Origin: Wallemia ichthyophaga EXF-994 | Lineage: Eukaryota; Fungi; Basidiomycota | Reading direction: 5' to 3' | Length of the DNA: 32,000 nucleotides | NCBI RefSeq assembly: GCF_000400465.1 | Contig: NW_008806298.1 | Coordinates: 30,001-62,000, forward strand | Part shown: positions 4,016-25,671 of the stretch, piece by piece | Layout of the letters: each line of letters starts with the position of its first letter | Position numbering within the stretch: the stretch's first letter is position 1 | The notes under the pieces: generated by a model | What the model was told of the DNA's origin: nothing | The model's database searches: none | Seen by the model: the letters and a program-made list of their open reading frames with translations, nothing else | Translations under genes and position numbers: made by a program

Positions 4016-5435
4016 TTAGACTTGTACAAATGCTCTATATACTTCTAGTGATGAACTTGAGCTTGATTTGATTTTTATCCCCGCGCCTGCTCCTACAAAC
4101 AACACGTCTCCTGTTTTCATTGTCTCGCTTTGACCTTGGTTTTCGACGAGGCCAGTTCCGTCAACGACCGCAAGGATGCTAGGTCCGTTTAGCGCATCGT
4201 GTTTTGTAGACTCGCCTCGAGAAAGTTGCACTCTAGCCACGCTGAACTCCTCAATCGGTGGGTCGTACACGATCGTGTGCGCCGCCCCTTTAAGGGAAGT
4301 CGTTTTCATTAACTGCGCATCGGCAGGAGCGGTCTCGTATGTCAGCATATCGACGAGCGTATTTACATCTCGCAGTTTTGGCGTTAGTCCCGCTCTAACT
4401 ACGTTGTTCGATGTCGCCATACACTCCATGATATCACCCGCGATATACGCGTGAGGGTCGTCTGCTTTGAGGAAGACGCTCTCGCCCGGCTTGAGTTGGA
4501 CTACGTTGAGAAGGAAGGTGCAGAATATTCCAATGTCTCCGGGGAATTGATCGTTCAGAGTGAGGACGAGTTGACGGACAGCATAGATGGAGTCACCGGC
4601 AATGTCTTCGTGTGTCTGGCTGGTGTATCTTGAGACAATGGCTTTGGTGAGCTCAGCGATCTTGTCTTGTGGTGCCGACATTACACCGCTAAAGACCCTT
4701 TTGAGAGCATCCTTTATTTCTTTGTCTAATGAGGCTGTTTTGAGATCCTGAACGTCTTTCTCTTCAACGAATGCTCTAAACTCCTTGACGCTATCGAGAA
4801 AGTGCACAATCTGCTCCTTTGGTCTGAATCCACAAAATCCTTTGAATTCAGTGAGTGCTATAGCCATTTCTGGCTATGGGAAGTGTGTTAGAGTGGGATA
4901 TGCGCAGACCGAGGACAAAGTACCTTATGATTTGAGTCTGAATTGACATAATCAGTGAAATACTACATCTTTTACGCTCCACCAACCTTTGTAGACATCC
5001 GGGCGATCTTTGTGCAGCTGCTCTGCAAGTCTTTTGTTCGGATGAGCCTGTACGCTCAACGCTTTCTCGATAGCGAGCACTTTAAACAGAAATGGCAGCC
5101 CGCCATCGCATGTTGTCTCTTTGAAAGCCTGCTTCACTTGATCTCCAACGAGTTGCGGGTTGCGCTGGAGATAGTGCGATAGCTTGCTTGATGGATCGTT
5201 GGCAAGATAGGCAGGCGCCTGCTCATGCGTACCCATCCACAGCTAAACCCGATCAGCATCACTTGCTCTCCCTCTCGTGAACCTACGAACCCACTTCAGC
5301 GTATGGCTTATCTTCTACCTGAAAACCCGGTATTGAGACCTCAGCGAAAGCTGCAGCTTTTGACAACTTGCCAACTTTGCCCCAATCGTAGGATTGAATG
5401 CCTGGAATAATTTTAAACACACTGCTGCTGTTCAT
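4016..5435 (-). CDS. PMI40: Mannose-6-phosphate isomerase (type I PMI)
   Basis: Exons 5435-5295, 5242-4987, 4937-4924, 4873-4016 give QSYDWGK, PYAELWMGTH, LPFLFKVL, LSVQAHP, DSNHKPEMAIALT, HAYIAGDIMECMATSNNVVRAGLTPK. Confidence 0.96.
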
Positions 5436-5667
5436 CGTCGTCGTACGGATAAGAAGCCGGTGAGCCGATGACGATGACAATTACAATGACAATGACGATG
5501 GCATGACGCACCCATAGTATTATAATTATTAGATGCATTCATTTCAAGTAGTTATAGTAATTGAGACTGAGAATATAAAGAGTGCGTCGGAGAGTTCTAC
5601 ATGTGTTTGGTCAGATGAGAGAAAGAGAGGTGTATTTGGAGTTGAGCGTTGAGTGGAACGCGTGTGC

Positions 5668-7567
5668 TTAGTGCTTCGATTTCTGCTCTTTCTTTTCATC
5701 TCCATTTTCATGCTTTATTGTCAACTTGTTTTGCAACTCAGTCTCGACTTCCTCTTGAACAAAGTCTATGGTATTCCACCTAGATGCTCTCTCCACAGCT
5801 CTGTTCCACAATCTGTAGACTCTTTGTCGTAATTTCGCATCGTCGTGTGGTGCAAAGAAGACGTTACCGGCAGTATTCACCAGATCTAATGTCTCAGGTT
5901 TGGTCACGTCCCAGCCCCACAACTTCAATGCTGATCCTGCCATAATAGCAGATCCTAATGCTGTAGACTCTCTCATCGTTGGTCGCTCGACTTCGACACC
6001 CAAGATATCCGATTGTATTTGCATCGCCAAGTCTGAATTGGTCATACCACCATCAACTCTAAGGATGTGGATGTTAACGCCTGAGTCAGCGTTCATGGCC
6101 TCGAGGATAGCTCTAGTTTGGAAGCAAGCTGCTTCTAGTGTAGCTCTAGCGACGTGAGCCTTTGTGGTATAACCTGTCATACCTAAAGGGACAATTTAGA
6201 ATAACTGATTTGAAGAAATAAATTATAACCAACCTATCAAGGTACCAGTAGCAGCACTGTCCCAGTATGGTGCGAACAGACCACCAAATGCAGTAACAAA
6301 GTAAACACCACCAGTGTCGTGCACTTGCGCAGCGAGTTCACCAATCTCGGAAGCACTGTCGATAAGCTCCATATTATCACGTAGCCAAGTAATGGCAGCA
6401 CCAGCGACAGATACTGAACCTTCTAATGCAAAATGAGTTGGGTAATCGGGTCCAGCTTTGTAAGCGACAGTACTGATCAAGCCGTTTTTGCTATATTTGA
6501 CTTCTTCACCAGTGTTAAAAAGCAAGAAAGCACCGGTACCGTACGTATTTTTAGCTTCACCTGCTCTGATGCATTTCTGACCGACAAGGGCAGCCTGTTG
6601 ATCACCAAGCATACCAGATATAGGAACACCGATGAAAGGACCGTGGTCAATGTTACCGTAGACTTCAGAAGAGGATTTGATTTGGGGAAGGATGGACGCT
6701 TTGAGTCCAAAGAAATCCAAAAGGGATTGGTCCCAGTCACAAGTCTGTAAGTTGAAAAGGAGAGTTCTTGAAGCGTTACTAATGTCGATGTAGTGGAAAC
6801 CTTTACCAGGACCACCAGTGAGGTTGTAAAGGTACCAACTATCAATAGTACCGAAGCAAAGACGGTCTTCTTCCATGGCGATTCTGACGTCATCGACGTG
6901 TTCAACGAGCCACTTCAACTTTAAACCGGAAAAGTAGGTAGTGAGGGGCATACCAGTTTTATCTTTTAAGATATCAGGGCCCTCGTCACCTGACAGCTCT
7001 TTAATCATGGTGTTTGTACGTGAATCATCCCAAACGATGGCGTTGTAGAGGGGCTGACCGGTATGGCGATCCCAGACGAGGGTAGTCTCACGCTGGTTAG
7101 TGATACCGAAAGCCTTCACAGCATCGAACGTGATTCCCGCGGCTTCCATTTTGTCTGCAATACAATCCATGACGATATAGACGGATTCGAGGAGGTCGAG
7201 TGGATCTTGTTCGTGCCAGCTGGAAAAGGGGTGAGCGGGGATGAAAGGAAGGCGGCCAACTAACCCAGGATAAGGATAATGCTGTGGATACTCAACTTGG
7301 TGCATTAGCGTTGGCGTGCCTTCAATAGGGTAAGCGGGTGATAGACTGTATACGCAGCAACCCACCAAACTTATCGAATAAGATGCAACGAGTGGAGCTG
7401 TGGGGACATTAGGCCTAGTTGATACACCACGCCAATCAACTCACGTTGTACCTGTGGAATACGTTAGATTGATAAATACATGTTGAGTTGAGAAACTCAC
7501 CCGTATCAATCGCAGCAACAAACTCAGTCATTCCGTCGGAGTTTAAGTTTGTCTGTTCTTGAGACAT
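5668..7567 (-). CDS. GUT1: Glycerol kinase (FGGY family)
   Basis: Exons 7567-7501, 7451-7445, 7397-7366, 7319-7265, 7219-6234, 6182-5668 give IDTGTTSTR, GITNQRETT, YNAIVWDD, GDQQAALVGQ, KNTYGTGAF, ALEGS, FGGLFAPYW, LRVDGGMT, ESTALGSA. A second possible start ATG is at 7531. Confidence 0.96.
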
Positions 7568-7954
7568 AAATTTAGTTTTATCAATCCTCGTTGGTGGTTG
7601 AGGAGTGCGTGGGTGAGCCTTGGGTAGCCAGCTATGATGTAGCCAATTGAAAAAATTGGATTTATTCGATTATTCCGTATGTGGCCTCTTCATTGCCTTT
7701 ATATTCCCGTAATTCCTACGTCTCGTCTGTATCCCTGCATTCGTCATTCCATACGCCGATCTGCAACCATTCCCGGGAAAAAGCACGCGGCAGGTCACCC
7801 GTATGCATACAATTAATAGGTTGTCCCATTAACCCTTTTTAGGGCTTTTTTCCTACTCTCTGAGGTGCCCCACATGGCACGTTACCCAATCAATGCTGTA
7901 GCCCAGTGTCATGTTTTTATTGTTTTATCCATTGAGAATTACATTTAAAACCAA

Positions 7955-11541: not shown

Positions 11542-14500
11542 ATGTCAGATAACCAAGATCCTGGCGGCGCAGCTGAAGTGGAGTACAACGTACGCAGCCA
11601 TAACTTTTATTTCGGCCGTTATCTTACGCCCTGCTTAGGTTGAGAAGCTCCTCGAGGCTGAGGTCAGTTACGACGCTATCGACAACAAGAAGACGTACTT
11701 TTACTACGTCAAGTGGGAGGACTATTCTTCTGATGAGAATAGGTGGGTTATCGGTGGCAGTTGAGATACAACGACTCATATAATCACCAGCTGGGAACCT
11801 GAGTCATGTATCAGCACAGACGAGTGTATCAAAGATTTCTGGAATGCTGTTGGGATCAACAAGCCTCCTCTTAGCAGCTGCGCTCTTAAAACTCACTGGG
11901 CCCCCTACAAGAAGCCCGCCAAGAAGGAGAAGCGCTCTTCGATCACTCAGAAGAACAAATCCGCGAAGAAGCGCAAGTCTAGTCCCAGTCCTGTGCGTGA
12001 AACTCCACCCAGGAAGCGCAAGTCAGCTGAAAATGCAAAACCTGGCGAAAGCAACAAGCGTATTAAGAAGGCTGTCCCACATGTGAGCGATGGCTCCTCA
12101 ATTGAGAGCAACGGCCATGGAAACGGCAGTGACAGCGACAGCGACACCGACGTTGAAGTCAGCACCGGGAAATCACCTCCAAAGAAATCTCCGATGATAG
12201 CCTCCCCAGTCAAAGCAACCTCCAATTCAAACAAAGCCAAGAAACCTCAAAAGCGTGTCAGCTTTTCTAATCAGGAAGCTGAATTTCTGAATTCTATCAA
12301 CGATGATCTCATTCCTTCTCCACCAGAATCAAATGATGAACAAGTATCAGATGAAGAGGATCTGCAGAATCGCACTAGACAGGAAGCCCTACGTATGATG
12401 AGCAATAAAGCTAAAAACAGACCATTCAGGCCAAGGAAAAGTGATACCGTCAAAGAAACTGCTAAAGAGAGGAGGGAGAGGGTTAAGGACGAAGCTGATC
12501 AGCGTCAAGCTGAAGAAGCTAAACGTCGGGAGGACGAAAGAAGGAAACAACTTCTCGAAAGAGAGAAGGAAAAGGACAGGCAAGAGGAGGTGAAGAGGAA
12601 AGCTGTAGAGAGCCAGAAAAAGGCAGACGAAGCAATTCGTAAAGCTGAACAAGAAGAGAAGAGAAGGGAGAACGAATTAGCAATCAAGAATGGCTCTAAA
12701 GTGCCCACTATTCGCAAGAGAGATCCTCCCAAGGTGCAGTCCGTCGAAGCCCTTTGGAATACAATTGATGGTCATCAAAACGCTGCTAGATTGAGTGTGT
12801 ATGAAAAGACGACTGGCAATAAACTCCCAAAGGTTGGTGGGCATAAGGATTCTTGTGTAGGAAATGGGGCGGGTTCAGCAGAAACCACTGCACACACTCC
12901 AGCTCCCAGCTCTTCATTTAATGGAATCAGACCCCGCTCAAGCTATTCTGGTAAGGCTGATAACGCTGATAACCCAAGAATCGATCAACCACAAATGTCT
13001 CCACCTCTTCAACAGCAGAATCTTCAAAACTTACCTCTGCAGCTGCCACCACCACCACAACCAGCTCAGCAGCAACAGCCTCAGCAACAATCTAGAGTTC
13101 AGGCGAACAGAAAAGGTCAACAACCAAGCAGCCAATTCAAGCCTCCAGCAAGACAGGCACAACAACCAATGGACAACATCTACCCAGCAAGGCAGACACA
13201 AGAACCTCAGGAAATAATCCACCCAGCAAGACAACAGAACAACTTCGACTCACCTTCGAATGGTGTTTTTACAAGAGAGAAAAACATGCTTGAAGACAAT
13301 GAGGAGGATTTTGAAAAATACGATACTTCAAAATCAGCTAAGAAGCTTCAGAAACAGTCGGAACGTACTGCTAGCAATACACTCCCACTAGGCAGCAAGA
13401 GGAGTTGGGGAGGTGGACAGCAAAGTGGAGCACCAGTATCAACATCAACATCAACATCAACATCAGCATCAGCACCAGCACAAGCACTAGCACCTCGGCG
13501 TTCAACTGAAGAACCTCTTCAAGCTCGGAACCAGCCTAATAAGGATCCTCGCAAGCTGCGTCAACAGCAGCAACAAGCTGCAAAGGCCGAGAAAGAAGCA
13601 CAGGCAGCACATACGACTAAGACAAAACATGAAGCACAGGCAGCACAGACAGCACAGACAGCACAGACAGAAGAAGCGGTAAAAGCACAGGGAGAACAGG
13701 AATTAAAAGCACCACATGCACAGGCACAGGCACAGCTGCAGCTGCAACAACAACCACGACAACCACCGCAACCACCATCACTAGCTGAGTCAGTACCCGA
13801 AGCACTCTTCAGGGATGATGACAAAGAAAAAGCAAATACCCGGAAAGATAGCAAGGAGGGTGTTGTTCTTCCAAACAACTTGCGCAGAGAATCAACAACA
13901 CCGCAGCCATCGCATGACCTGCCAGTAATGTATAGCAAGAATTTACCAACCGATGCGCTCTGGAAGGGTGTGATGTTCGCTCATCAGAAGAGACTCGGCA
14001 ATGTTGGTTTTGTCGATGTGACAATAGCAAGTGAAGAGGAAAATGTTGCTCCCCCTATGAGTATGAAAGACTCCCTACAATACCTAAAGGAGTTGAAACT
14101 CGTCTGCTTCCTCGATGCTCAAAGTTTCAAGAAACATGTCAACCAAGTCAACCAGGTCGTCGAGGTGATGTCGCCTGATTTTTCCATGAGACGTTTCTTA
14201 AAAGAACTCGTCGGGTTCGACAAAGTTGGTATTTTCCAGGTTGACGGAGGTGACAATAGCGCAGAGTCAGACGAGATACGCTTTATTGCGTTCGCTCCTG
14301 CGAAGATACCAGATTTGAGAGTGTACTTCAATTTACCAAAGGAGAATCAGATCTTTGCACTCCTCGTGACGATGCCTAGAAATGTCAAATTGCAGTTCGA
14401 AAAGATCGACAAGTGGGATAGAGAAAATGCGAATAATGAGGATGAGGATGAGGATGACAAGATAAGGGTGCAGCGTGAGATTGCTGAGACGAAAAGATGC

Positions 14501-16500
14501 GAAGAAGCAAATAGGGAGAGTCTCACAGAGGCTACAGCAACTGACCAAAGAGTGACTGCAAATGGGCACTCTACGTCAATGGATGTATCTATAAACGAGG
14601 GTATTGGTGTGACTCAGCCTGCGATAGTTGTGGATGGAGAGACTGGCTCGGCTGAATTGACTGACAACGATGCTACGAATGTCAACAATGCTACCAGTGT
14701 AAATAATGCTTCCCTTGGCTCCCAAGCTGCACCTCCAACTGCGTCTCAACCGGTTCTTGTTTCTACTCCTGCTCCTGCTCCTCAAAGTGCTCAGCCTACC
14801 TCTCAACCTGTCTCTCAATCAACAAGTGCCTCTGCTGATCCACGTCTTTCTCGCCACCAAGCTGATAATAACATAGGCAAAACACCTACCCCAGAACCAT
14901 CTGGGCTGCCTCAAGAGTTAGTCGAGAAGGAGAAAGCGAAGCGGAATCTCATCGAAACGAATAAACGCGAGCAAGTCGAGAAGAAGCAGCGTGAAGAGAC
15001 GACTGCAGCGGGAAAAGGAGTAGTATCAAATAGACACTCATTTGCGACTATGCACACATCTACAAGTAAAGAATCACAGCATAGTAATGCTACGTCAAGT
15101 GATGACGCTGCCAGCAATCGCAATGCAAATACCAATGCTGCAGCCACAACAACACCTCAATCTGCTCTTACAGACCCGCGTGTTTCTCGCCGTCAAACTG
15201 AGAATAAAGGAGCTTCCGCACCTTCATCATCGACATCTGCTGGAACATCAAGAGATACTCGCCTGGCGCGCAACCAACAGACAAAGACAGTGAAGGAAGA
15301 AATGATCAAGAAAGAGGCGGGAGTAGCACCACCACTATCTATGTCCAAGACATTAGAGGAGATAGCCAAGTACAAAAAGGAATTAAATTTCTCATCTTCG
15401 AAAATGAGATCCTTGGGTATAGATGGAAAGCTGTATAGAATATCAGCTCCACCGTTTGTCAGCGAACAAAGTAACCAATTGCGCTTAATTCTTACACATC
15501 ACAAATGTAAAGAAGCTACAGGAAACTTTGAAGAGGCATCGAGGGCAGCTACGTTACGGTTTATACATCTCCAGCAGATCGACTATGTCGCGAGTATGCC
15601 TGGTATCACTGACGCTAGATGTAACAAGTCTGTTAGGTTTTTCTTGTTCGGTAAGAATGAAAAAATTCCCAAAGAGCTGTGGAAAGTGAATGAGATATAC
15701 AGATGTGGTGAGTAATTGCGATTGTGAGGGTTTGCAATAGAATCTCACTCACTCATCTGAATAGGTGGTTTAATTACATTCACCTCGAGAGTCCTATCTC
15801 AGGAGACGGAGAAAGTAATTGAGCTTCTTGAACTATTTGCAGCTGTTAGAAATCAAAATACGTACTGGCAAGCATTTGTCCTTGATGACGTCTACAAGAA
15901 GGCCATTTATACATTGAGGGAAGAGATCGCGGTGAGGTCTGAGAACCAACCGGAGGAATATCGACTGGAACTGCTTAGAAGTCTGTTCAAGCCAACAGGG
16001 AAGCTCATGTCATTTGGTCAGCTACCTGCAAACAATCCTAATCCAGTCACACGTAAGTGAAGTTGTGATTTCTAGTCATTACAGCAGCTTACTTGGACAA
16101 ACAAACAGCCACAGAAAAACAGTATATGTTATCGAGAATAAGTAGGAGAAAGGGACAGTTTAACGGAGATACTATAATGGGTACTGCTATTTCGCGTCTA
16201 CCTGAGGGACAGACAGACGCAGATACATGGCTTCTTGAAGAGATGAAACGTATACAGGTGGGTATGACGAGTGGCAAGGTGATTTATTTTCACACTCTGC
16301 AGTACCATGTTGATATTCGCGTCATTCATCGTCGATATGTTGTAATTGATGTTGACGGCGCTGACTTTGGCAGTGAGAATAACTCTGTGGGTTGCGCGCG
16401 TTGTTGAATGGTGAAGATTTCTAACGAGACGTGGCAGATTGAGAAGCACAGCTGTGATAGCTTTATTGATGAAATCAAGGGCGGTACCTTGATTACGTGA
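11542..16500 (+). CDS. Large chromodomain protein, Chp1-like (N-terminal chromodomain, coiled coil, Q-rich and S/T-rich linkers, folded central and C-terminal domains)
   Basis: Exons 11542-11589, 11639-11742, 11791-15707, 15765-16052, 16109-16257, 16303-16386, 16438-16500 form one open frame. Chromodomain EYNVEKLLE..YYVKWEDY..ENSWEPE. Central LWKG block is SPOC-like. C-terminal IYRCGGLITFTSRVL..KVIELLELF resembles fungal Chp1-type proteins (from memory). Chromodomain call is firm; family call is tentative. Confidence 0.75.
13438..13473 (+). repeat. Coding hexamer microsatellite (ATCAAC)4 then (ATCAGC)2, encoding STSTSTSTSASA
   Basis: Read directly from the sequence. Confidence 0.85.
13643..13669 (+). 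repeat. Coding 9-mer tandem repeat (GCACAGACA)3, encoding AQT x3
   Basis: Read directly from the sequence. Confidence 0.85.
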
Positions 16501-20483: not shown

Positions 20484-21884
20484 TCAAACATAAACAAAGG
20501 AATTTGGTACAAGGGGTTTAGCGAGAGCGACATGGCGTCTAAACTCTTCAGTGAGGACGTAATTGATTTTGTACGTGTGGTACGTGTGGTACGCGTGGCA
20601 CGTATGGTTGACATAGCCCGATCTCATCTGAAAGCAGTTTGTGTTAAGTGTGATAGTACCACTAGTGAGACATTTCTCGAACAGGCCCATAATAGTAGCG
20701 AGAATGCGACGTGCACAACCACCTGGAGCGAGATTGTGACGAATGTGTTGAAGCATTTTGCGTCGATTGATCCCTATACATCGATTGCAGGGGTCGCTAC
20801 ACCCTTTCATGCCCGTGCTTGGTGAGTTACGAAGGAGAAACTGCACGAGCTGATCGAAAGCCATACCATCACCAATTTGCACTCGCCGGACAACCATCAG
20901 CTGGAGGGGGAAAGGGAGAGGGTTCGAGAGGGGCATGTAGTGGCTGTTTCCGTTGTGACTTGTGTGTCCGGTGTAGCCTGTGTATCCATAGTATCCACAG
21001 TATTCCCCGTGTCCTACCCTCCTGTTGAGCCCCTCCTGCTGGCGGAGGTAGAGCTGCGAAAACATCTCGTTGAGGTTGCGGTGGTCGCTGTGCGTGTGTT
21101 CGCGTGTGTGCGTGCTTAAGCTGCCACTCACACCTGCATCTACCACACCACGCTCACGCTCACGCTCGCTACCTGGTGCTGGCGATGTTAGTGGTACGCA
21201 AGTAAATGAGTCGCGCCGAGCGATCTGTGGACGAGTGCGGCGCGGTTGCGTTGGTTGCTCTGCTTGCTCTGCTTGCAGCTGTGCGAGGGCATCGACGCTA
21301 CCAAAGAGACCGTCGTCGCCGGTGGGAGTGCGAGCAGGAGTGTTAGTGTGTGCAGGTGCATGTCCATTAGCACGCCCACGTCCTTGAATAGCAGCAGCAG
21401 AAGCGGCAGCCTGTTGCAATTGCAAGCTGTGAAGGGGCCCTCTGCGCACAATGACGACATGTTCAGAATGCGTGTCAGACTGGCTACCAACACCAACGCC
21501 TGTACTCTCACTCCCGCCCAAAGCGTGACCTACACCGCGAGCGGAATGGCGGCCGCTCACCATCCCAGCCAACCACTTCTCCTCATCCTCCTCACCTACC
21601 CCGTCCTGGTCATCTTGGGAAGGAGAAGCGACGGTGATGTCAACGACGGGATACGACTCCAGATTGTACTGCGTAGGCGAGCGCGTTTGACACTGGCTGG
21701 GATACGTCGTATGTCCTACTCCACCCCAGTTGTGCGTGTGCGTAGGGTGGATCGTCAGGGTGTCGATCGCATCGATGGTAAGGTCCATGTAGAATGGGCG
21801 CAAGAGGTCCGCGTGCGTAGGAAAAGGCGTGGTGTGGTGCGTGTACATTGTGTCTGCGTACTCGATGTGTTGGATGTACGACAT
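20484..21884 (-). CDS. Hypothetical low-complexity protein (466-aa ORF), no family recognised
   Basis: Long ATG-initiated ORF filling the gap between TCP1 and MOG1; rich in H/T/G/R repeats, with a Cys/His-containing C-terminus. A possible in-frame intron at 21017-20901 is unresolved. Confidence 0.55.
   Translation of the reverse strand: MSYIQHIEYADTMYTHHTTPFPTHADLLRPFYMDLTIDAIDTLTIHPTHTHNWGGVGHTTYPSQCQTRSPTQYNLESYPVVDITVASPSQDDQDGVGEEDEEKWLAGMVSGRHSARGVGHALGGSESTGVGVGSQSDTHSEHVVIVRRGPLHSLQLQQAAASAAAIQGRGRANGHAPAHTNTPARTPTGDDGLFGSVDALAQLQAEQAEQPTQPRRTRPQIARRDSFTCVPLTSPAPGSERERERGVVDAGVSGSLSTHTREHTHSDHRNLNEMFSQLYLRQQEGLNRRVGHGEYCGYYGYTGYTGHTSHNGNSHYMPLSNPLPFPLQLMVVRRVQIGDGMAFDQLVQFLLRNSPSTGMKGCSDPCNRCIGINRRKMLQHIRHNLAPGGCARRILATIMGLFEKCLTSGTITLNTNCFQMRSGYVNHTCHAYHTYHTYKINYVLTEEFRRHVALAKPLVPNSFVYV
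20571..20606 (+). repeat. Degenerate 9-mer tandem repeat (GTACGTGTG)-like x4, encoding HTC-HAY-HTY-HTY in the orphan ORF
   Basis: gtacgtgtg gtacgtgtg gtacgcgtg gcacgtatg. Confidence 0.75.
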
Positions 21885-22324
21885 TTACGTGTCTTGAGTC
21901 TTGTCTTGGATAAGTTGATGTCTGAATCAAGGAGTAAAGAGGAGAGAGAAGAGGGATTAAAGAACAGAGAGTTTTGCACGCATTCAGAATTCATCTCCCA
22001 CCGCCCCTCCACCGCTTGTGGAAATTGCAAAATTTCTTACAAACCTTCTACATCGGGAATCTGGACGTTAGAATATGGAAGATGTCGGATTTGAGGTATG
22101 GGAAGAATGTAGAGTGGCTATGAAAGGAAGCAGCGGTGGCAGAGTGATTTTTAAAGAGGGAAATTATGGGTATAAAATTTTGATGGGTATATGGAGTGCT
22201 TGGGATAGTGAGATTTATTGAGATAGAGTGGAATAAAGAGAGATAGAGAGAGGAATTATACTGAGAAATAGAAGATTAGGATTATGTAAACAACTTCCCT
22301 GACCCACCACCAACCACTCGAACA

Positions 22325-22762
22325 ATGAAGACATACGAATGCTTCGATGGGGCTATATCGTTTGAATCGCCGGTGGATTTGGTGAATGGGAGTTTATTCA
22401 GGCAGGTTCCAGATACGCAAGAATTATATTTGGAGAGAAACGGCGAAGGTAGTGTGATAGTGGAGGTGCTCGAGCTGGTTCACGAGGCCAAGACGCTGGA
22501 AGAGGCTGGAGAATACCACTTTAAATCTCTAGCCCACGATAACGAGACGGAGGAATACGAAATACAGAATATTACCGTCATTAGCGATTCCAGCTGCGTC
22601 GTCAAAGGCCTTCAAACGATAGAGAAGGCGGGAGTGATTGAGAATATCCCTATAAACCTCAATGTCCTCAGAATCGCAGGGAAATACGATCTGGTCACGC
22701 AATTTAACAAATTGGCGCACACGCCAATCCACGTCAACGACTACTCGCTCTTCTACTTGTAA
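22325..22762 (+). CDS. MOG1: Ran-binding / nucleotide-release factor Mog1 (short, 145 aa)
   Basis: Intronless. FDGAI, SLFRQVPDTQELY, SVIVEVLE, YHFKSLAHDN and C-terminal VNDYSLF are typical Mog1 motifs. Confidence 0.88.
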   Translation: MKTYECFDGAISFESPVDLVNGSLFRQVPDTQELYLERNGEGSVIVEVLELVHEAKTLEEAGEYHFKSLAHDNETEEYEIQNITVISDSSCVVKGLQTIEKAGVIENIPINLNVLRIAGKYDLVTQFNKLAHTPIHVNDYSLFYL

Positions 22763-22767
22763 GCGTC

Positions 22768-24376
22768 ATGAGCAATATTTTAAATTTGAATTCGGTTATC
22801 AAGAGACTAGAGTGTACGACTGGCAGGCTGGAGGATATTCTATTGGACAGCAGCTTGTTGAAGCAGGCTGGCAGCAGTGGCAGTGGTGCTGACACCGTGG
22901 CAGGTTCAGAGCCGGCACCAGCGACAGCAACAGCACCGCCAGCAGCCCCACACACTCCACCACCAGCCATCGCAGACTTCACCAACCTCCTCAACACCCA
23001 CCTCTCCCCTTTCACCGTTCTCTCTGCTGAAATTGGCGGCGAAATCCACAGCCAATCACAGAATCTCGAGTCTCTCCTGCAGAAGACTCTGTCCATCGTC
23101 CTCACACCTGCCAGCCGCTCGAAGCCTCCGACAAACTTGTCCACCTTCCAGAACTCGCTCTCGCCAATCATCACTCACGTCAACAAGATTGTCCAATTGA
23201 GTGACTCAGCACCCAAAGCTCTCCAGTTGCCCCTCAAGGCTGTCGCTGAAGGTGTCCCTGCCTTTGGCTGGTTTACTATCGCCCCCAAGCCAGCGCCATA
23301 CATCCAAGACTTCAAAGACGCGGCTCAATTCTACGCGAATCGCGTCATCAAGGAGTTTAAAGGTGGTGACGAGAGGATGGTGCAGTGGGTGAAGCTTTTT
23401 ATGGGGCTGTTGGAGGAACTCAGGGTGTATGTCCATAAGCACCACACCACTGGCCTCAGTTGGAACGAGAAGGATGGTGTGGCGTACGAGGAGTATGTCA
23501 GTGGTGAGGGGGGTGATAAAAGCTCTGATGCTACTCCTACTAACAATTCCACTCCTCCACCTGCTCCTGCTCCACCTGCTCCTGCCCCGCCTGCTCCTCC
23601 TGCTCCCACCTCAACCTCCACACACCCTCAGTCTCCCCAACAAGGCCCCGAAGCAGTCTTTGCGCAGCTCAACAAAGGCTCCGACATCACAAAAGGGTTG
23701 CGCAAGGTGGATACTGAGCAGATGACGCACAAGAATCCGTCGCTAAGAGATGCTGGCAGCACAGAAAGCACCCCCAAAAAGCAGCAACCGCCTATCGCTG
23801 CCAAGCCAAAGTCGCTCACACGTACCACCTCGAGCCACCCTCCTAAGACACAACTCGATGGCCAGAAATGGTTTATTGTGGGTAGTGTGTCTTTATCATG
23901 AAGAAATCCTTATTGATATATACTTTCAGGAAAACCACACTAACACACCTCATATACTCATCGACGACACCAAGCTGTCGCACACGGTGAATATCTTCAA
24001 CTGCAAAAATACAGTGGTGGAAGTGAAAGGTAAGGTGAATGCGTTGAATATGGTGGGATGCCACAGAACATCCGTTTTGCTTGACAACCTCGTCTCCTCA
24101 CTGAGTATCACCACTTCACCCAATTTCACAGTACAAATACTGGGCGTGGCGCCTACTGTTACTGTTGATGCTACTGATGTCGGTCAGATATATCTTAGTA
24201 AGGGGTGTATTGAGGCGGACACTGAGATTATTACCGCTAAAACCTCGTCTGTTAATGTTAGCTTGCCTGATAATCAAGAGGACGGCGAATTCGTCGAGAA
24301 ACCGATACCTGAGCAGCTCAAGACTGTTGTCCGTGATGGAAGGCTAGTCAGTAGCGTGGTGGAGCATAGTGGGTAA
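22768..24376 (+). CDS. SRV2: Adenylyl cyclase-associated protein CAP/Srv2
   Basis: Exons 22768-23877 and 23930-24376. N-terminal IKRLECTTGRLEDI (RLE repeat), VAEGVPAFGW, FYANRVIKEFK, polyproline P1, WH2-like ITKGLRKVDTEQMTHKNPSLR, C-CAP beta-helix, terminal VVEHSG. Confidence 0.96.
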
Positions 24377-24505
24377 TATATCCGACCGAATGAAATAAAT
24401 GAATCAAATATCCAAATATCCAAATCAAAACAGCCAATACGTATCATCTACTCAAAATCAAGTCATAAAATAAAACAAAACAGCCAATAAATATCCTTGA
24501 GTATG

Positions 24506-25342
24506 CTAGAAACCATCTCTTCTCTTCCTGCCTGTGTATTTGGAGTCAAGGGGGACGCCCTGTTTACCCTTCTGTCTCTGAAGGTGTTTCTTGTGGTTGA
24601 TATGGTCTTTAGCGGAGTGTTTGATGTTAGTGCGTGGGGGACGATGTGTGGATTGTGATTGCCTGCCGACATTGCTGACAGTGCCAGTTTCAGTCTTGGC
24701 GGCTGGCATCTGCACCTCCTTTCCACTAACACCTGCGAACAAACAGAGGTAGAACTTCTTCGCTTTTCTGCTATTAGGGTAGTCTACCACCAGTCCACCG
24801 CTAAAACCAGCCTTCTGAGCGAATCCCATAATAAATCCCACCTGGTCGTCTGACTCTGGGTAAAACTGGAAGACTGCCCTGCTGCCTCTAGAGAGAGCAG
24901 CATAGAGCGAGTTAAAGAAGCGCATTAAGCGGCTTCCTGGGTTCGCAGAGGTAGAGTCTGCGTTGCAAAGCCACTGAAGGACAGATATGGATATAGCGCC
25001 GTCGAAAGAGCCCGCACGAACGTGCACTCCGCTGCCTATATCGCTGAGCATCAGGTCGCCTTCGAGGTCCCTCTCTAGGGCTATAGATAGCATGCTCGGG
25101 GAGATATCACAGCCCAACCAATAATGGCCCTCCTCGTCGAGTATTTCCCCACTCAAACCACTGCCGCAGCCAATATCCAGTAGAAATTTAGGTGTTTGTC
25201 CGTCGTTATCCCCTAGCAGCTCTAACGCACGGTATGTCATCTCCGCTTGGATTTGCTGCACACGCGTATTAGACGTGTATTTTCCAGCCTCGCTGTCATT
25301 GTAGAATATCTCAGGCGGCGCTATGTGTTCAGGACGGGACAT
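24506..25342 (-). CDS. BUD23: 18S rRNA m7G methyltransferase Bud23/WBSCR22
   Basis: MSRPEHIAPPEIFYN, LLDIGCGSGLSG, FDGAISISVLQWLCNA, GFSGGLVVDYPNS, KYTGRKRR. Intronless. Confidence 0.96.
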   Translation of the reverse strand: MSRPEHIAPPEIFYNDSEAGKYTSNTRVQQIQAEMTYRALELLGDNDGQTPKFLLDIGCGSGLSGEILDEEGHYWLGCDISPSMLSIALERDLEGDLMLSDIGSGVHVRAGSFDGAISISVLQWLCNADSTSANPGSRLMRFFNSLYAALSRGSRAVFQFYPESDDQVGFIMGFAQKAGFSGGLVVDYPNSRKAKKFYLCLFAGVSGKEVQMPAAKTETGTVSNVGRQSQSTHRPPRTNIKHSAKDHINHKKHLQRQKGKQGVPLDSKYTGRKRRDGF

Positions 25343-25629
25343 GTTGCTTCAGCTGTTGGTGGTGGTTGATTACTCTTGCTATCGATGCTAATCACTCGTG
25401 GTGCTGCTGTTGCCGGGATTGTAAAGTTGATTGGTATTCTACTCGGCTTTTTTATACTCTTGCGTGAGTTGCGGAAGCCGGAAGATTTTCACGGAAAGAG
25501 AAGTCAGTAAGAGAGTAAAGGTAGTATGACACACGCTGCGCACTCTGTATAATCTACAGACCACACACCGCCACACTCCCGCACTCCCCCGAATATCGCC
25601 GCTTCTCCCGCCATCTCCCACCGCCAAAA

Positions 25630-25671
25630 ATGGATACGCACCCAACTCAAAACGGTCATCAGCTAATTTAA
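25630..25671 (+). other. Candidate uORF (13 codons, MDTHPTQNGHQLI*) whose TAA abuts the IDH1 ATG
   Basis: AAAAATGG start context; in frame with IDH1; junction TAA|ATG. Whether it lies inside the transcript is unknown. Confidence 0.35.

What the first reader, a model, noticed from the sequence alone, without database searches (positions are those of the whole stretch)
22741..22810. MOG1 and SRV2/CAP are 5 nt apart on the same strand (operon-like packing)
Seen: ..TAC TTG TAA gcgtc ATG AGC.. Both proteins look complete at the junction (Mog1 ends VNDYSLFYL; CAP starts with its RLE motif), and they are in different frames. There is no room for a terminator or promoter. Inference: either a dicistronic mRNA with re-initiation or leaky scanning, or dual-use coding DNA where the pyrimidine-rich MOG1 tail is the CAP TSS and the AT-rich CAP start (AATATTTTAAATTTGAA) is the MOG1 poly(A) signal. 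The stop also overlaps a donor-like GTAAGC (22759), which could splice into CAP; a GAG at 22805 would give an in-frame fusion, but no good branch point is visible.
Basis: partly seen in the sequence, partly recalled or inferred. Interest (0 to 1): 0.75.

Follow-up and report, generated by a model that had tools for sequence, protein, structure and literature searches.

The report
Two fungal genes five bases apart
In the salt-loving fungus Wallemia ichthyophaga the small Ran-binding gene MOG1 ends five bases before the actin regulator CAP/SRV2 begins; this abutment is real, kept across the genus and wrongly merged into one protein in public annotations, but it is most likely an extreme case of overlapping transcription units in a very compact genome rather than a new mechanism.

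Summary
Mog1 (22325..22762) stops at TAA 22760-62, then gcgtc, then the CAP/Srv2 ATG at 22768. Both proteins are complete right up to the junction. The 140 nt around it are identical in seven independent assemblies.

The window is Wallemia ichthyophaga. The abutment is conserved:
- 1 nt and 7 nt in other Wallemia lineages.
- 73 nt in a deep-branching lineage.
- In W. hederae an inversion of the CAP-Bud23 block placed Bud23 11 nt behind the Mog1 stop, and CAP took over the old Bud23 5' flank.

These models come from ab initio or protein-guided prediction. The supposed intron is conserved CAP coding sequence, lacks a branch site, and has no counterpart in relatives, so the fusion is very probably a misannotation.

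Leaky scanning is not supported, because ATGs are not depleted in Mog1. No conserved RNA structure is present.

The most likely mechanism (about 0.5) is overlapping transcription units, with the CAP start site inside the Mog1 tail. A truly dicistronic mRNA with reinitiation (about 0.15) cannot be excluded. No transcript data were reachable.

The parts
21885..22324 (+). Divergent intergenic region between a 466-aa ORF (minus strand) and Mog1. It is the presumed Mog1 promoter and leader, is purine-rich, and holds an ATG-TAA mini-uORF at 22284-22289.
   Evidence: the role is inferred from position only
22325..22762 (+). MOG1 (Ran-binding Mog1/RANGRF family). Single exon, 145 aa, stop TAA 22760-22762.
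   Evidence: Pfam PF04603 E=4e-22; PDB Mog1p and RANGRF hits; C-terminal family motif; orthologues at 52-74% identity in other Wallemia
22665..22767 (+). ATG-free, G-poor tail of the Mog1 CDS plus the spacer. Candidate start-site and leader zone of the CAP mRNA (inferred, not shown).
   Evidence: The last upstream ATG is at 22662. G is 0.15 here against 0.28 in the rest of the CDS. The composition resembles the 73-nt true spacer of lineage L065.
22763..22767 (+). 5-nt spacer gcgtc between the Mog1 stop and the CAP start.
   Evidence: identical in 7 assemblies; 1, 7, 7, 11 and 73 nt in other lineages
22759..22826 (+). Pseudo-intron used by GenBank fusion models. Donor GTAAGC at 22759. The acceptor ends at 22805 (47 nt, the 650-aa strain models) or at 22826 (68 nt, the 643-aa EXF-994 model). 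Judged not to be a real intron.
   Evidence: models; no YTRAY branch motif; the removed codons are conserved coding sequence; PMC3849046 and PMC6738226 (models made without transcript evidence)
22768..23877 (+). CAP/SRV2 exon 1: RLE-RLE N-terminal motif, helical folded domain, proline-rich and WH2-like middle.
   Evidence: Pfam CAP_N-CM and CAP_N; homologues
23878..23929 (+). CAP intron, 52 nt, GTGGGT...TTGAT...CAG.
   Evidence: the joined exons give a 518-aa CAP colinear with homologues
23930..24376 (+). CAP/SRV2 exon 2 (CARP/beta-helix C-terminal domain), stop TAA 24374-24376.
   Evidence: Pfam CAP_C E=2e-52
24506..25342 (-). BUD23/WBSCR22 18S rRNA methyltransferase, convergent with CAP (129-nt gap). 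In W. hederae this gene, not CAP, follows Mog1.
   Evidence: Pfam; W. hederae arrangement
25343..25671 (.). Bud23-IDH divergent intergenic region. Its homologue lies in front of CAP in W. hederae.

Best explanation
Two separate, functional genes are packed head-to-tail in a very compact basidiomycete genome and are expressed as overlapping transcription units.

Shown:
- Both ORFs are complete and conserved.
- The spacer is 5 nt here and 1-11 nt in four further lineages.
- The GenBank fusion intron is not credible.

Inferred:
- The CAP mRNA starts inside the last ~50-100 nt of the Mog1 coding sequence, with its upstream promoter elements further inside Mog1. This gives an ordinary short, ATG-free, G-poor leader.
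- The Mog1 mRNA ends either a few tens of bases into the CAP region or reads on to the CAP terminator at 24377-24505. Such an RNA would be physically bicistronic but serve only Mog1.

The Mog1 tail therefore does double duty as coding sequence and as 5' flank of whatever gene lies downstream.
For: (1) The genome is compact. Coding sequence covers about three quarters of it, at 514 genes/Mb (PMC3849046). Other same-strand spacers are 39-232 nt and convergent gaps are 86-147 nt, so overlapping UTRs must be common. Annotators also fuse other neighbours.

(2) Every species has an ATG-free stretch of 52-156 nt before the downstream ATG. The nearer in-frame ATGs end at the Mog1 stop.

(3) In a deep-branching lineage the same gene pair is separated by a 73-nt spacer that is ATG-free, 4% G and 66% pyrimidine, and looks like a normal fungal leader. 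The Mog1 tails of the tight species share the G-poor composition: 0.10-0.15 against 0.20-0.31.

(4) There is a natural flank swap. In W. hederae the CAP-Bud23 block is inverted. Bud23 now starts 11 nt after the Mog1 stop. CAP sits behind the former Bud23 leader; the motif CCACCAACAGC lies 9-15 nt before the ATG in both species. So the position right behind Mog1 supports expression of an unrelated housekeeping gene, and CAP does not need Mog1.

(5) Translation from a Mog1-capped RNA looks inefficient. Mog1 has 145 codons, A at -3 of its ATG, and 4-10 internal ATGs. From general knowledge, CAP is normally far more abundant than Mog1.
Against: No transcript, cap or poly(A) data could be reached. 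No recognisable promoter element was identified.

The ATG-free stretches are not significantly longer than expected from the ATG density (my estimate, combined p about 0.1). The G-poverty is not significant at third codon positions (14/80 against 129/505) and may simply follow from the amino acids.

The model does not explain why the spacer stays at or below 11 nt in four lineages and again after the inversion.

The W. hederae evidence rests on one reference-guided assembly (PMC6738226).
Confidence: 0.5

Rival explanations
1. A truly dicistronic mRNA. One capped transcript carries Mog1 and CAP, and ribosomes that terminate at the Mog1 stop reinitiate at the CAP ATG a few bases downstream.
For: Stop-to-start distance is kept at 1, 5, 7, 7 and 11 nt in five lineages. 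It is short again after the downstream gene was exchanged in W. hederae. Reinitiation is the only model that needs this proximity.

Polycistronic transcripts are documented in Agaricomycetes (PMC4503453). In green algae, spacers of 6-14 nt support expression of two ORFs (PMC7896298, PMC11291117).
Against: Reinitiation efficiency falls steeply with the length of the upstream ORF (stated in PMC11291117), and Mog1 has 145 codons.

No conserved sequence or RNA structure lies upstream of the stop. The alignment fold gave 0 pairs, the single-sequence fold gave z=+0.62, and synonymous sites vary freely.

A lineage with a 73-nt spacer exists. In W. hederae, CAP works from an ordinary 440-nt intergenic region.

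The downstream proteins (CAP, Bud23) are expected to be needed in larger amounts than Mog1 (general knowledge).
Confidence: 0.15
2. A dicistronic mRNA translated by leaky scanning past the Mog1 ATG, as in green-algal bicistronic loci.
For: The inter-ORF distance is short. W. ichthyophaga and W. mellicola Mog1 have no internal methionine.
Against: Internal ATGs in all frames are not depleted. Observed counts are 4, 7, 10 and 6, against synonymous-shuffle means of 4.0, 6.7, 8.8 and 6.2.

In the window, one ATG (22662) opens a 76-codon out-of-frame ORF that overlaps the CAP start. The Mog1 ATG has A at -3.
Confidence: 0.03
3. One gene encoding a Mog1-CAP fusion protein, made by splicing from GTAAGC (22759) to an acceptor at 22805 or 22826, as annotated in all GenBank W. 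ichthyophaga genomes.
For: The models have canonical GT-AG boundaries, are in frame, and have an intron size typical of Wallemia (47 or 68 nt against real introns of 42-53 nt).

Eleven cluster members from more than 10 strains carry the fusion.
Against: The models come from GeneMark-ES ab initio prediction, and from MAKER using that proteome as evidence, not from transcripts. The two pipelines chose different acceptors.

The 'intron' contains the CAP ATG and 13-20 codons of the conserved N-terminal motif L-N/S-S/T-V-I/L-K/R-R-L-E-x-T-T-x-R-L-E. Between species, 5 of the 6 pairwise comparisons over these 16 codons show 6-11 synonymous codon differences and the sixth shows 1.

There is no YTRAY branch motif, while all checked real introns have one.

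W. mellicola has no GT donor at the stop. In W. hederae, CAP has the same N-terminus with no Mog1 upstream.

A G-ending last codon followed by TAA yields GTAA automatically, and in-frame AGs within 80 nt are expected by chance.
Confidence: 0.05
4. An artefact: a misassembly at the junction, or Mog1 is a decaying pseudogene whose 3' signals no longer matter.
For: None found.
Against: The junction is identical in 7 independent assemblies. The Mog1 ORF is intact, with family motifs, in six lineages at 52-75% identity.
Confidence: 0.01

Closest known systems
Polycistronic / read-through transcription units of mushroom-forming basidiomycetes (Gordon et al. 2015, PMC4503453)
   Same: Same phylum. 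Same-strand neighbouring genes with complete ORFs. The genes there are also transcribed independently, which matches the favoured model here of a nested CAP mRNA plus a possible read-through Mog1 RNA.
   Different: That study reported the phenomenon as characteristic of Agaricomycetes and did not include Wallemiomycetes. No transcripts are available here. The spacing here (1-11 nt) leaves no intergenic DNA at all. The pair is conserved across a genus, and the downstream partner was exchanged once.
Overlapping transcription in compacted eukaryotic genomes (microsporidia such as Encephalitozoon; the concept is from my own knowledge of Williams et al. 2005, and the E. cuniculi transcriptome paper PMC3629993 was listed but not read)
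   Same: Genome compaction removes intergenic DNA, so start sites and poly(A) sites fall inside neighbouring genes.
   Different: Wallemia is a free-living basidiomycete of 9.6 Mb with normal introns, much less reduced than microsporidia. Overlap is inferred here, not observed.
Green-algal bicistronic loci translated by leaky scanning (PMC7896298, PMC11291117)
   Same: Two unrelated ORFs lie on one strand with an inter-ORF distance down to a few bases, in different frames.
   Different: The defining signatures (weak start context of ORF 1, depletion of ATGs before ORF 2, short ORF 1) were tested here and are not met.
Termination-reinitiation with adjacent or overlapping stop and start codons, as known from several RNA viruses including fungal ones (from my own knowledge; no sequences compared)
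   Same: The stop of ORF 1 and the start of ORF 2 lie within a few nucleotides.
   Different: Those systems rely on a dedicated upstream RNA element. No conserved sequence or structure was found here. This is also a cellular gene pair.
Merged gene models in compact fungal genomes (annotation artefact)
   Same: Ab initio predictors bridge a tiny intergenic gap with a chance GT-AG pair. In the same genomes ERG2+AKR+EMC4 (627 aa) and TRM10+DnaJ (599 aa) are merged likewise.
   Different: This concerns only the public annotation, not the biology of the locus.

Membership tests
Mog1/RANGRF (Pfam PF04603) | Match to the Mog1 domain model above the curated cut-off | tested here: met
   79.5 bits against a cut-off of 27.4; model positions 3-137 of 139. 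PDB hits 1eq6, 1jhs and 5yfg.
Mog1/RANGRF (Pfam PF04603) | Family-wide C-terminal strand motif [IV]xD[YFW][SG]LF close to the stop, showing that the protein is complete at the junction | tested here: met
   IHVNDYSLFYL aligns with the C-terminal ends of 14 of 15 distant relatives. The protein is shorter than usual (145 aa against about 180-200 aa) because the segment before this strand is reduced.
Mog1/RANGRF (Pfam PF04603) | Binding to Ran GTPase | not testable with these tools
   Biochemical property.
CAP/Srv2 adenylyl cyclase-associated protein | N-terminal conserved RLE motif, helical CAP_N domain, C-terminal CAP_C domain, in that order | tested here: met
   CAP_N-CM 19.5 bits (cut-off 19; residues 10-59), CAP_N 166 bits, CAP_C 178 bits. 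The joined exons are colinear with 500-530-aa fungal CAPs.
CAP/Srv2 adenylyl cyclase-associated protein | Start codon immediately before the N-terminal motif, independent of the upstream gene | tested here: met
   In four lineages an ATG lies 12-28 codons before the first RLE. In W. hederae the same N-terminus follows a 440-nt intergenic region.
Leaky-scanning bicistronic locus (green-algal type) | Under-representation of ATGs between the ORF 1 start and the ORF 2 start | tested here: not met
   4, 7, 10 and 6 internal ATGs against shuffle means of 4.0, 6.7, 8.8 and 6.2.
Leaky-scanning bicistronic locus (green-algal type) | Weak initiation context of ORF 1 | tested here: inconclusive
   The Mog1 ATG has A at -3 in the window (aacaATGA), which is usually favourable. 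The Wallemia consensus context was not derived.
Leaky-scanning bicistronic locus (green-algal type) | Both ORFs present only on one shared transcript | not testable with these tools
   No transcript data. Metagenome scans for spliced cDNA found nothing.
Polycistronic transcription unit (Agaricomycete type) | Same-strand adjacent complete ORFs, with the configuration conserved in relatives | tested here: met
Polycistronic transcription unit (Agaricomycete type) | Long-read transcript spanning both ORFs | not testable with these tools
   No long-read or assembled cDNA of Wallemia was found in the collections searched.
Termination-reinitiation cassette | Stop and restart codons within a few nucleotides | tested here: met
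   1-11 nt in five lineages, but 73 nt in a sixth.
Termination-reinitiation cassette | Short upstream ORF, or a conserved RNA element upstream of the stop | tested here: not met
   The upstream ORF has 145 codons. There is no conserved structure or nucleotide conservation beyond what coding explains. Complementarity to 18S rRNA was not tested.
Spliced fusion gene (GenBank model) | Intron with donor, branch site and acceptor like the organism's real introns | tested here: not met
   GT-AG is present, but there is no YTRAY motif in either candidate. Real introns have TTGAT, TTGAC, CTAAC or CTGAC 8-18 nt before a YAG acceptor. One candidate acceptor is GAG.
Spliced fusion gene (GenBank model) | Splice signals conserved in relatives, and intron free of coding constraint | tested here: not met
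   There is no GT at the W. mellicola stop. The 'intron' codons are conserved, with mostly synonymous changes.

The most novel reading that the evidence does not exclude
The Mog1 gene of Wallemia heads a genuine cellular dicistron. A single capped mRNA yields Mog1 and then, by termination-coupled reinitiation after a 145-codon ORF, the downstream protein. This would explain why the stop-to-start distance is held at 1-11 nt across the genus. It would also explain why an inversion in W. hederae could put Bud23 into the same slot at 11 nt. Efficient reinitiation after a long ORF without any recognisable RNA element would be new for fungi.
Probability: 0.15. Interest if true: 0.8.

Novelty: new member of a known kind. 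Interest (0 to 1): 0.42.

Why it matters
(1) Annotation. Every public W. ichthyophaga genome, including the reference EXF-994 protein listed as 'Adenylyl cyclase-associated protein', carries a 643-660-aa Mog1-CAP chimera. The evidence here says this is two proteins.
- Mog1 is mis-ended in W. mellicola and missing in W. hederae.
- Other neighbouring genes are merged in the same way.
- Orthology tables, BUSCO scores and domain-architecture counts for this class of fungi inherit these errors.

(2) Biology. The locus is a clean, conserved test case of how far a free-living eukaryote can delete intergenic DNA. The promoter or leader of one housekeeping gene has to lie inside the coding sequence of another. 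The W. hederae inversion is a natural exchange of 5' flanks between two housekeeping genes.

(3) If the minority reading (reinitiation on a dicistronic mRNA) were true, it would be a rare cellular example in fungi, and one directly testable with existing strains.

Tried and rejected
Transcript evidence.
- I looked for spliced (intron-less) CAP among cluster members. Only genomic ORF pieces and the NCBI fusion models exist.
- I scanned JGI metagenome and metatranscriptome contigs for the W. mellicola spliced CAP exon junction: 0 hits.
- I scanned the same collection for a degenerate Mog1-tail pattern: 46 hits, none encoding Mog1 or CAP by tblastn.
- The supplements of the W. ichthyophaga transcriptome paper hold only per-gene expression for the fused model, so I did not pursue them.

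RNA elements.
- Rfam found nothing in the window.
- The junction folds no better than shuffles (z=+0.62).
- There is no consensus structure across four species.
- A 7-bp hairpin at 22711-22728 is specific to this species.

Nucleotide conservation of the Mog1 tail beyond coding needs: none is obvious.

ATG-free leader and G-poor tail as statistical signals: both point in the expected direction but are not significant.

Older synteny: CAP is not next to Mog1 in Gloeophyllum trabeum or Rhodotorula toruloides.

Read-through or frameshift fusion: the frame offset between the two ORFs differs among species, with stop plus spacer lengths of 8, 10, 4 and 14 nt, so there is no conserved recoding route.

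Not run: structure prediction, because sequence evidence already fixed both protein ends.
Full report
1. WHAT IS IN THE SEQUENCE

The + strand reads ...TAC TTG TAA gcgtc ATG AGC....
- TAA lies at 22760-22762, the spacer at 22763-22767 and the ATG at 22768.
- The upstream ORF (22325..22762, 145 aa) matches Pfam Mog1 over nearly the whole model: E=4e-22, positions 3-137 of 139. It also hits the solved Mog1p and RANGRF structures.
- The downstream gene has two exons, 22768..23877 and 23930..24376, separated by a 52-nt GTGGGT...CAG intron. The exons carry CAP_N-CM, CAP_N and CAP_C.
- The joined exons give a 518-aa protein colinear with fungal CAP/Srv2 proteins.

2. BOTH PROTEINS ARE COMPLETE AT THE JUNCTION

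I ran an exhaustive HMMER search with Mog1 and aligned 15 distant relatives.
- The family ends with a conserved strand, [IV]xD[YFW][SG]LF, followed by 1-3 residues.
- The window's ...IHVNDYSLFYL-stop is exactly this end.

On the CAP side:
- No start codon lies upstream in frame.
- The next in-frame ATG is about 200 codons downstream.
- The residues right after the ATG belong to the conserved RLE-RLE motif.

There is no slack on either side.

3. THE JUNCTION IS NOT AN ARTEFACT

The 140 nt around the junction are identical in seven assemblies:
- four independent Logan assemblies (SRR25393946, SRR25393947, SRR25393958, SRR25394054);
- three GenBank strain assemblies.

4. ORGANISM AND GENOMIC SETTING

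The closest named proteins are from Wallemia ichthyophaga, at 98-100% identity. The window matches the EXF-994 variant residues.

This basidiomycete has a 9.6-Mb genome. About three quarters of it is coding, at 514 genes/Mb (PMC3849046).

Other same-strand spacers I could measure:
- about 232 nt (glycerol kinase to PMI);
- 97 nt (PMI to Vts1);
- about 140-160 nt (TRM10 to DnaJ);
- 61 and 39 nt (ERG2 to AKR to EMC4 in W. mellicola).

Convergent gaps behind CAP are 86-147 nt. Five bases is therefore the extreme of a generally tight genome, not an isolated oddity.

5. THE ABUTMENT IS CONSERVED

- W. mellicola CBS 633.66: the real Mog1 ORF runs on to ...VIKDYSLFYL TAA, then tacgtca (7 nt), then the CAP ATG. 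The GenBank Mog1 model ends too early, through a doubtful second intron.
- Two further members of that species complex have the same 7-nt junction.
- An unnamed Wallemia from SRR25399871 (L009)...DYSLFYL TAA a ATG, a spacer of 1 nt.
- A deep-branching Wallemia-like lineage from ENA metagenomes (L065, L066, L069): the same gene order, but a 73-nt spacer that is ATG-free, 4% G and 66% pyrimidine. Its Mog1 also has a less reduced C-terminal region.
- Outside Wallemia, CAP is not next to Mog1 in Gloeophyllum trabeum or Rhodotorula toruloides.

6. A NATURAL FLANK SWAP IN W. HEDERAE

W. hederae is the sister species of W. ichthyophaga (PMC6738226). Its two-gene convergent block CAP-Bud23 is inverted relative to all other lineages.
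- Mog1 there ends ...DYSLFVL TAA, followed by cgccatcacaa (11 nt) and the ATG of Bud23.
- CAP starts with its usual N-terminus, 440 nt from the divergent IDH gene.
- The IDH-proximal part of that 440 nt aligns with the IDH-Bud23 intergenic region of W. ichthyophaga.
- The last bases before the CAP ATG (...CCACCAACAGCgacatcactcATG) match the Bud23 leader of W. ichthyophaga (...CCACCAACAGCtgaagcaacATG).

Both breakpoints therefore lie within about a dozen bases of the two start codons, and the two genes exchanged their 5' flanks.

Two things follow:
- CAP does not need Mog1 upstream.
- The position directly behind the Mog1 stop can express an unrelated housekeeping gene.

Caveat: this rests on a single reference-guided assembly.

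7. THE SPLICE-FUSION READING

- The EXF-994 reference protein (643 aa) splices to 22827, a 68-nt 'intron'.
- The strain genomes (646-660 aa) splice to 22806, a 47-nt 'intron'.

The models have no transcript support:
- The reference was annotated ab initio with GeneMark-ES.
- The strains were annotated with MAKER, using that proteome as evidence.

Arguments against a real intron:
- The two pipelines disagree on the acceptor.
- The removed segment contains the CAP ATG and 13-20 codons of the conserved motif L-N/S-S/T-V-I/L-K/R-R-L-E-x-T-T-x-R-L-E. In 5 of the 6 species pairs, 6-11 of these 16 codons differ synonymously; the sixth pair has 1.
- Neither candidate has a YTRAY branch motif. Every real Wallemia intron I examined has one.
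- W. mellicola has no GT at its stop.
- W. hederae CAP has the same N-terminus without Mog1 upstream.
- A G-ending codon followed by TAA creates GTAA automatically, and an in-frame AG within 80 nt is expected by chance.

I conclude that the fusion is a misannotation. A rare spliced isoform cannot be excluded without reads.

8. A DICISTRONIC mRNA

Leaky scanning, the mechanism shown for green-algal bicistrons, predicts a weak first start and depletion of ATGs before the second ORF (PMC11291117).
- The mature Mog1 CDS holds 4, 7, 10 and 6 internal ATGs in the four tight species. Synonymous-codon shuffles give means of 4.0, 6.7, 8.8 and 6.2.
- The ATG at 22662 opens an out-of-frame ORF running past the CAP start.
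- The Mog1 ATG has A at -3.

Leaky scanning is therefore not supported.

Termination-reinitiation is the one model that needs stop and start to be close. That would fit the persistence of 1-11 nt, including after the inversion.

Against it:
- The upstream ORF is long (145 codons).
- No conserved sequence or structure precedes the stop.
- A lineage with a 73-nt spacer exists.
- The downstream proteins are expected to be more abundant than Mog1.

9. THE FAVOURED MECHANISM

The favoured reading is overlapping transcription units: the CAP mRNA starts within the Mog1 tail.

Support:
- An ATG-free stretch of 106, 156, 52 and 62 nt precedes the downstream ATG in the four tight species. The nearer ATGs are in the Mog1 frame and end at its stop.
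- The last 60 nt of Mog1 are G-poor (0.10-0.15 against 0.20-0.31). In W. ichthyophaga and W. hederae they are also C-rich, like the genuine 73-nt leader of the L065 lineage.
- The flank exchange in W. hederae.
- The general compaction of the genome.

Neither the ATG-free length nor third-position G content is statistically significant on its own. No promoter motif was identified.

Where the Mog1 mRNA ends is unknown. It may end just inside CAP, or it may read through to the CAP terminator. In the second case a physically bicistronic RNA would coexist with a nested CAP mRNA, as described for Agaricomycetes, where co-transcribed genes are also transcribed independently (PMC4503453).

10. VERDICT

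It belongs to a known kind, namely overlapping or polycistronic tandem genes in compact eukaryotic genomes, and is an extreme and well-defined member of it.

The practical result is that the public Mog1-CAP fusion proteins of W. ichthyophaga are very probably wrong.

The open question is whether CAP has a nested promoter or is translated by reinitiation on a dicistron. It needs cap mapping, long-read cDNA, ribosome footprints or peptides. None of these was reachable here.

Noticed in passing
L008 (W. hederae SPNW01000047.1) 5242-7894, compared with window 22768-25342: The convergent CAP-Bud23 block is inverted in W. hederae, with both breakpoints within about a dozen bases of the two start codons. 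A CATCAC hexamer sits 2-3 nt before both ATGs, forming a short inverted repeat at the ends of the inverted block.
   Followed up: yes
window 22325-22762, compared with L007 5189-5240, L009 4708-4749, L008 8197-8156: The Mog1 intron after ...EEAGE/AAK (42-52 nt) is present in W. mellicola, W. hederae and the L009 species. It is absent in W. ichthyophaga, whose Mog1 is a single exon: an intron loss.
   Followed up: partly
L007 5001-5511; L008 7906-8382 and 5001-5241: There are public annotation errors around the locus. The W. mellicola Mog1 model (127 aa) ends early through a doubtful intron. W. hederae Mog1 is not annotated at all. The W. hederae CAP model (571 aa) carries doubtful extra 5' exons upstream of the conserved ATG at 5242.
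   Followed up: partly
L005/L006/L013 (W. mellicola strains) about 8320 onward; L008 1359-3523: Other neighbouring same-strand genes are merged in public models: ERG2 + aldo-keto reductase + EMC4 (627 aa; spacers 61 and 39 nt in the CBS 633.66 models) and TRM10 + DnaJ (599 aa). Merged models are probably frequent in Wallemia annotations.
   Followed up: no
L065 6535-6607 (also L066, L069; ENA metagenome assemblies ERZ28597369, ERZ27248804, ERZ28599689): This is a deep-branching Wallemia-like lineage: Bud23 is 70-78% and CAP exon 1 is 46-54% identical to the named species. It keeps Mog1-CAP-Bud23 synteny, with a 73-nt pyrimidine-rich spacer and a longer Mog1 C-terminal region. Its species identity is unknown.
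   Followed up: partly
window 22284-22289: A minimal upstream ORF (ATG directly followed by TAA) lies 35 nt before the Mog1 start codon, in a purine-rich leader region.
   Followed up: no
window 22711-22728: A perfect 7-bp hairpin with a 4-nt loop (ATTGGCG CACA CGCCAAT) sits inside the Mog1 tail, 40 nt before the CAP ATG. It is not conserved in the other species, and the region as a whole folds no better than shuffles.
   Followed up: yes
window 23545-23600 (CAP proline-rich tract): The PPAPAPPAP tract length varies among W. ichthyophaga strains. One strain has 10 extra residues. Another lacks 4 residues in the alanine/threonine/proline stretch near the N-terminus.
   Followed up: no
window 20484-21884 (-) and 11993-15715 (+): Two large ORFs (466 aa, rich in His/Thr/Tyr repeats; and 1240 aa) have no Pfam match. 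The 466-aa ORF has a 398-aa counterpart at the same position in L009, so it is probably a real, fast-evolving gene.
   Followed up: no
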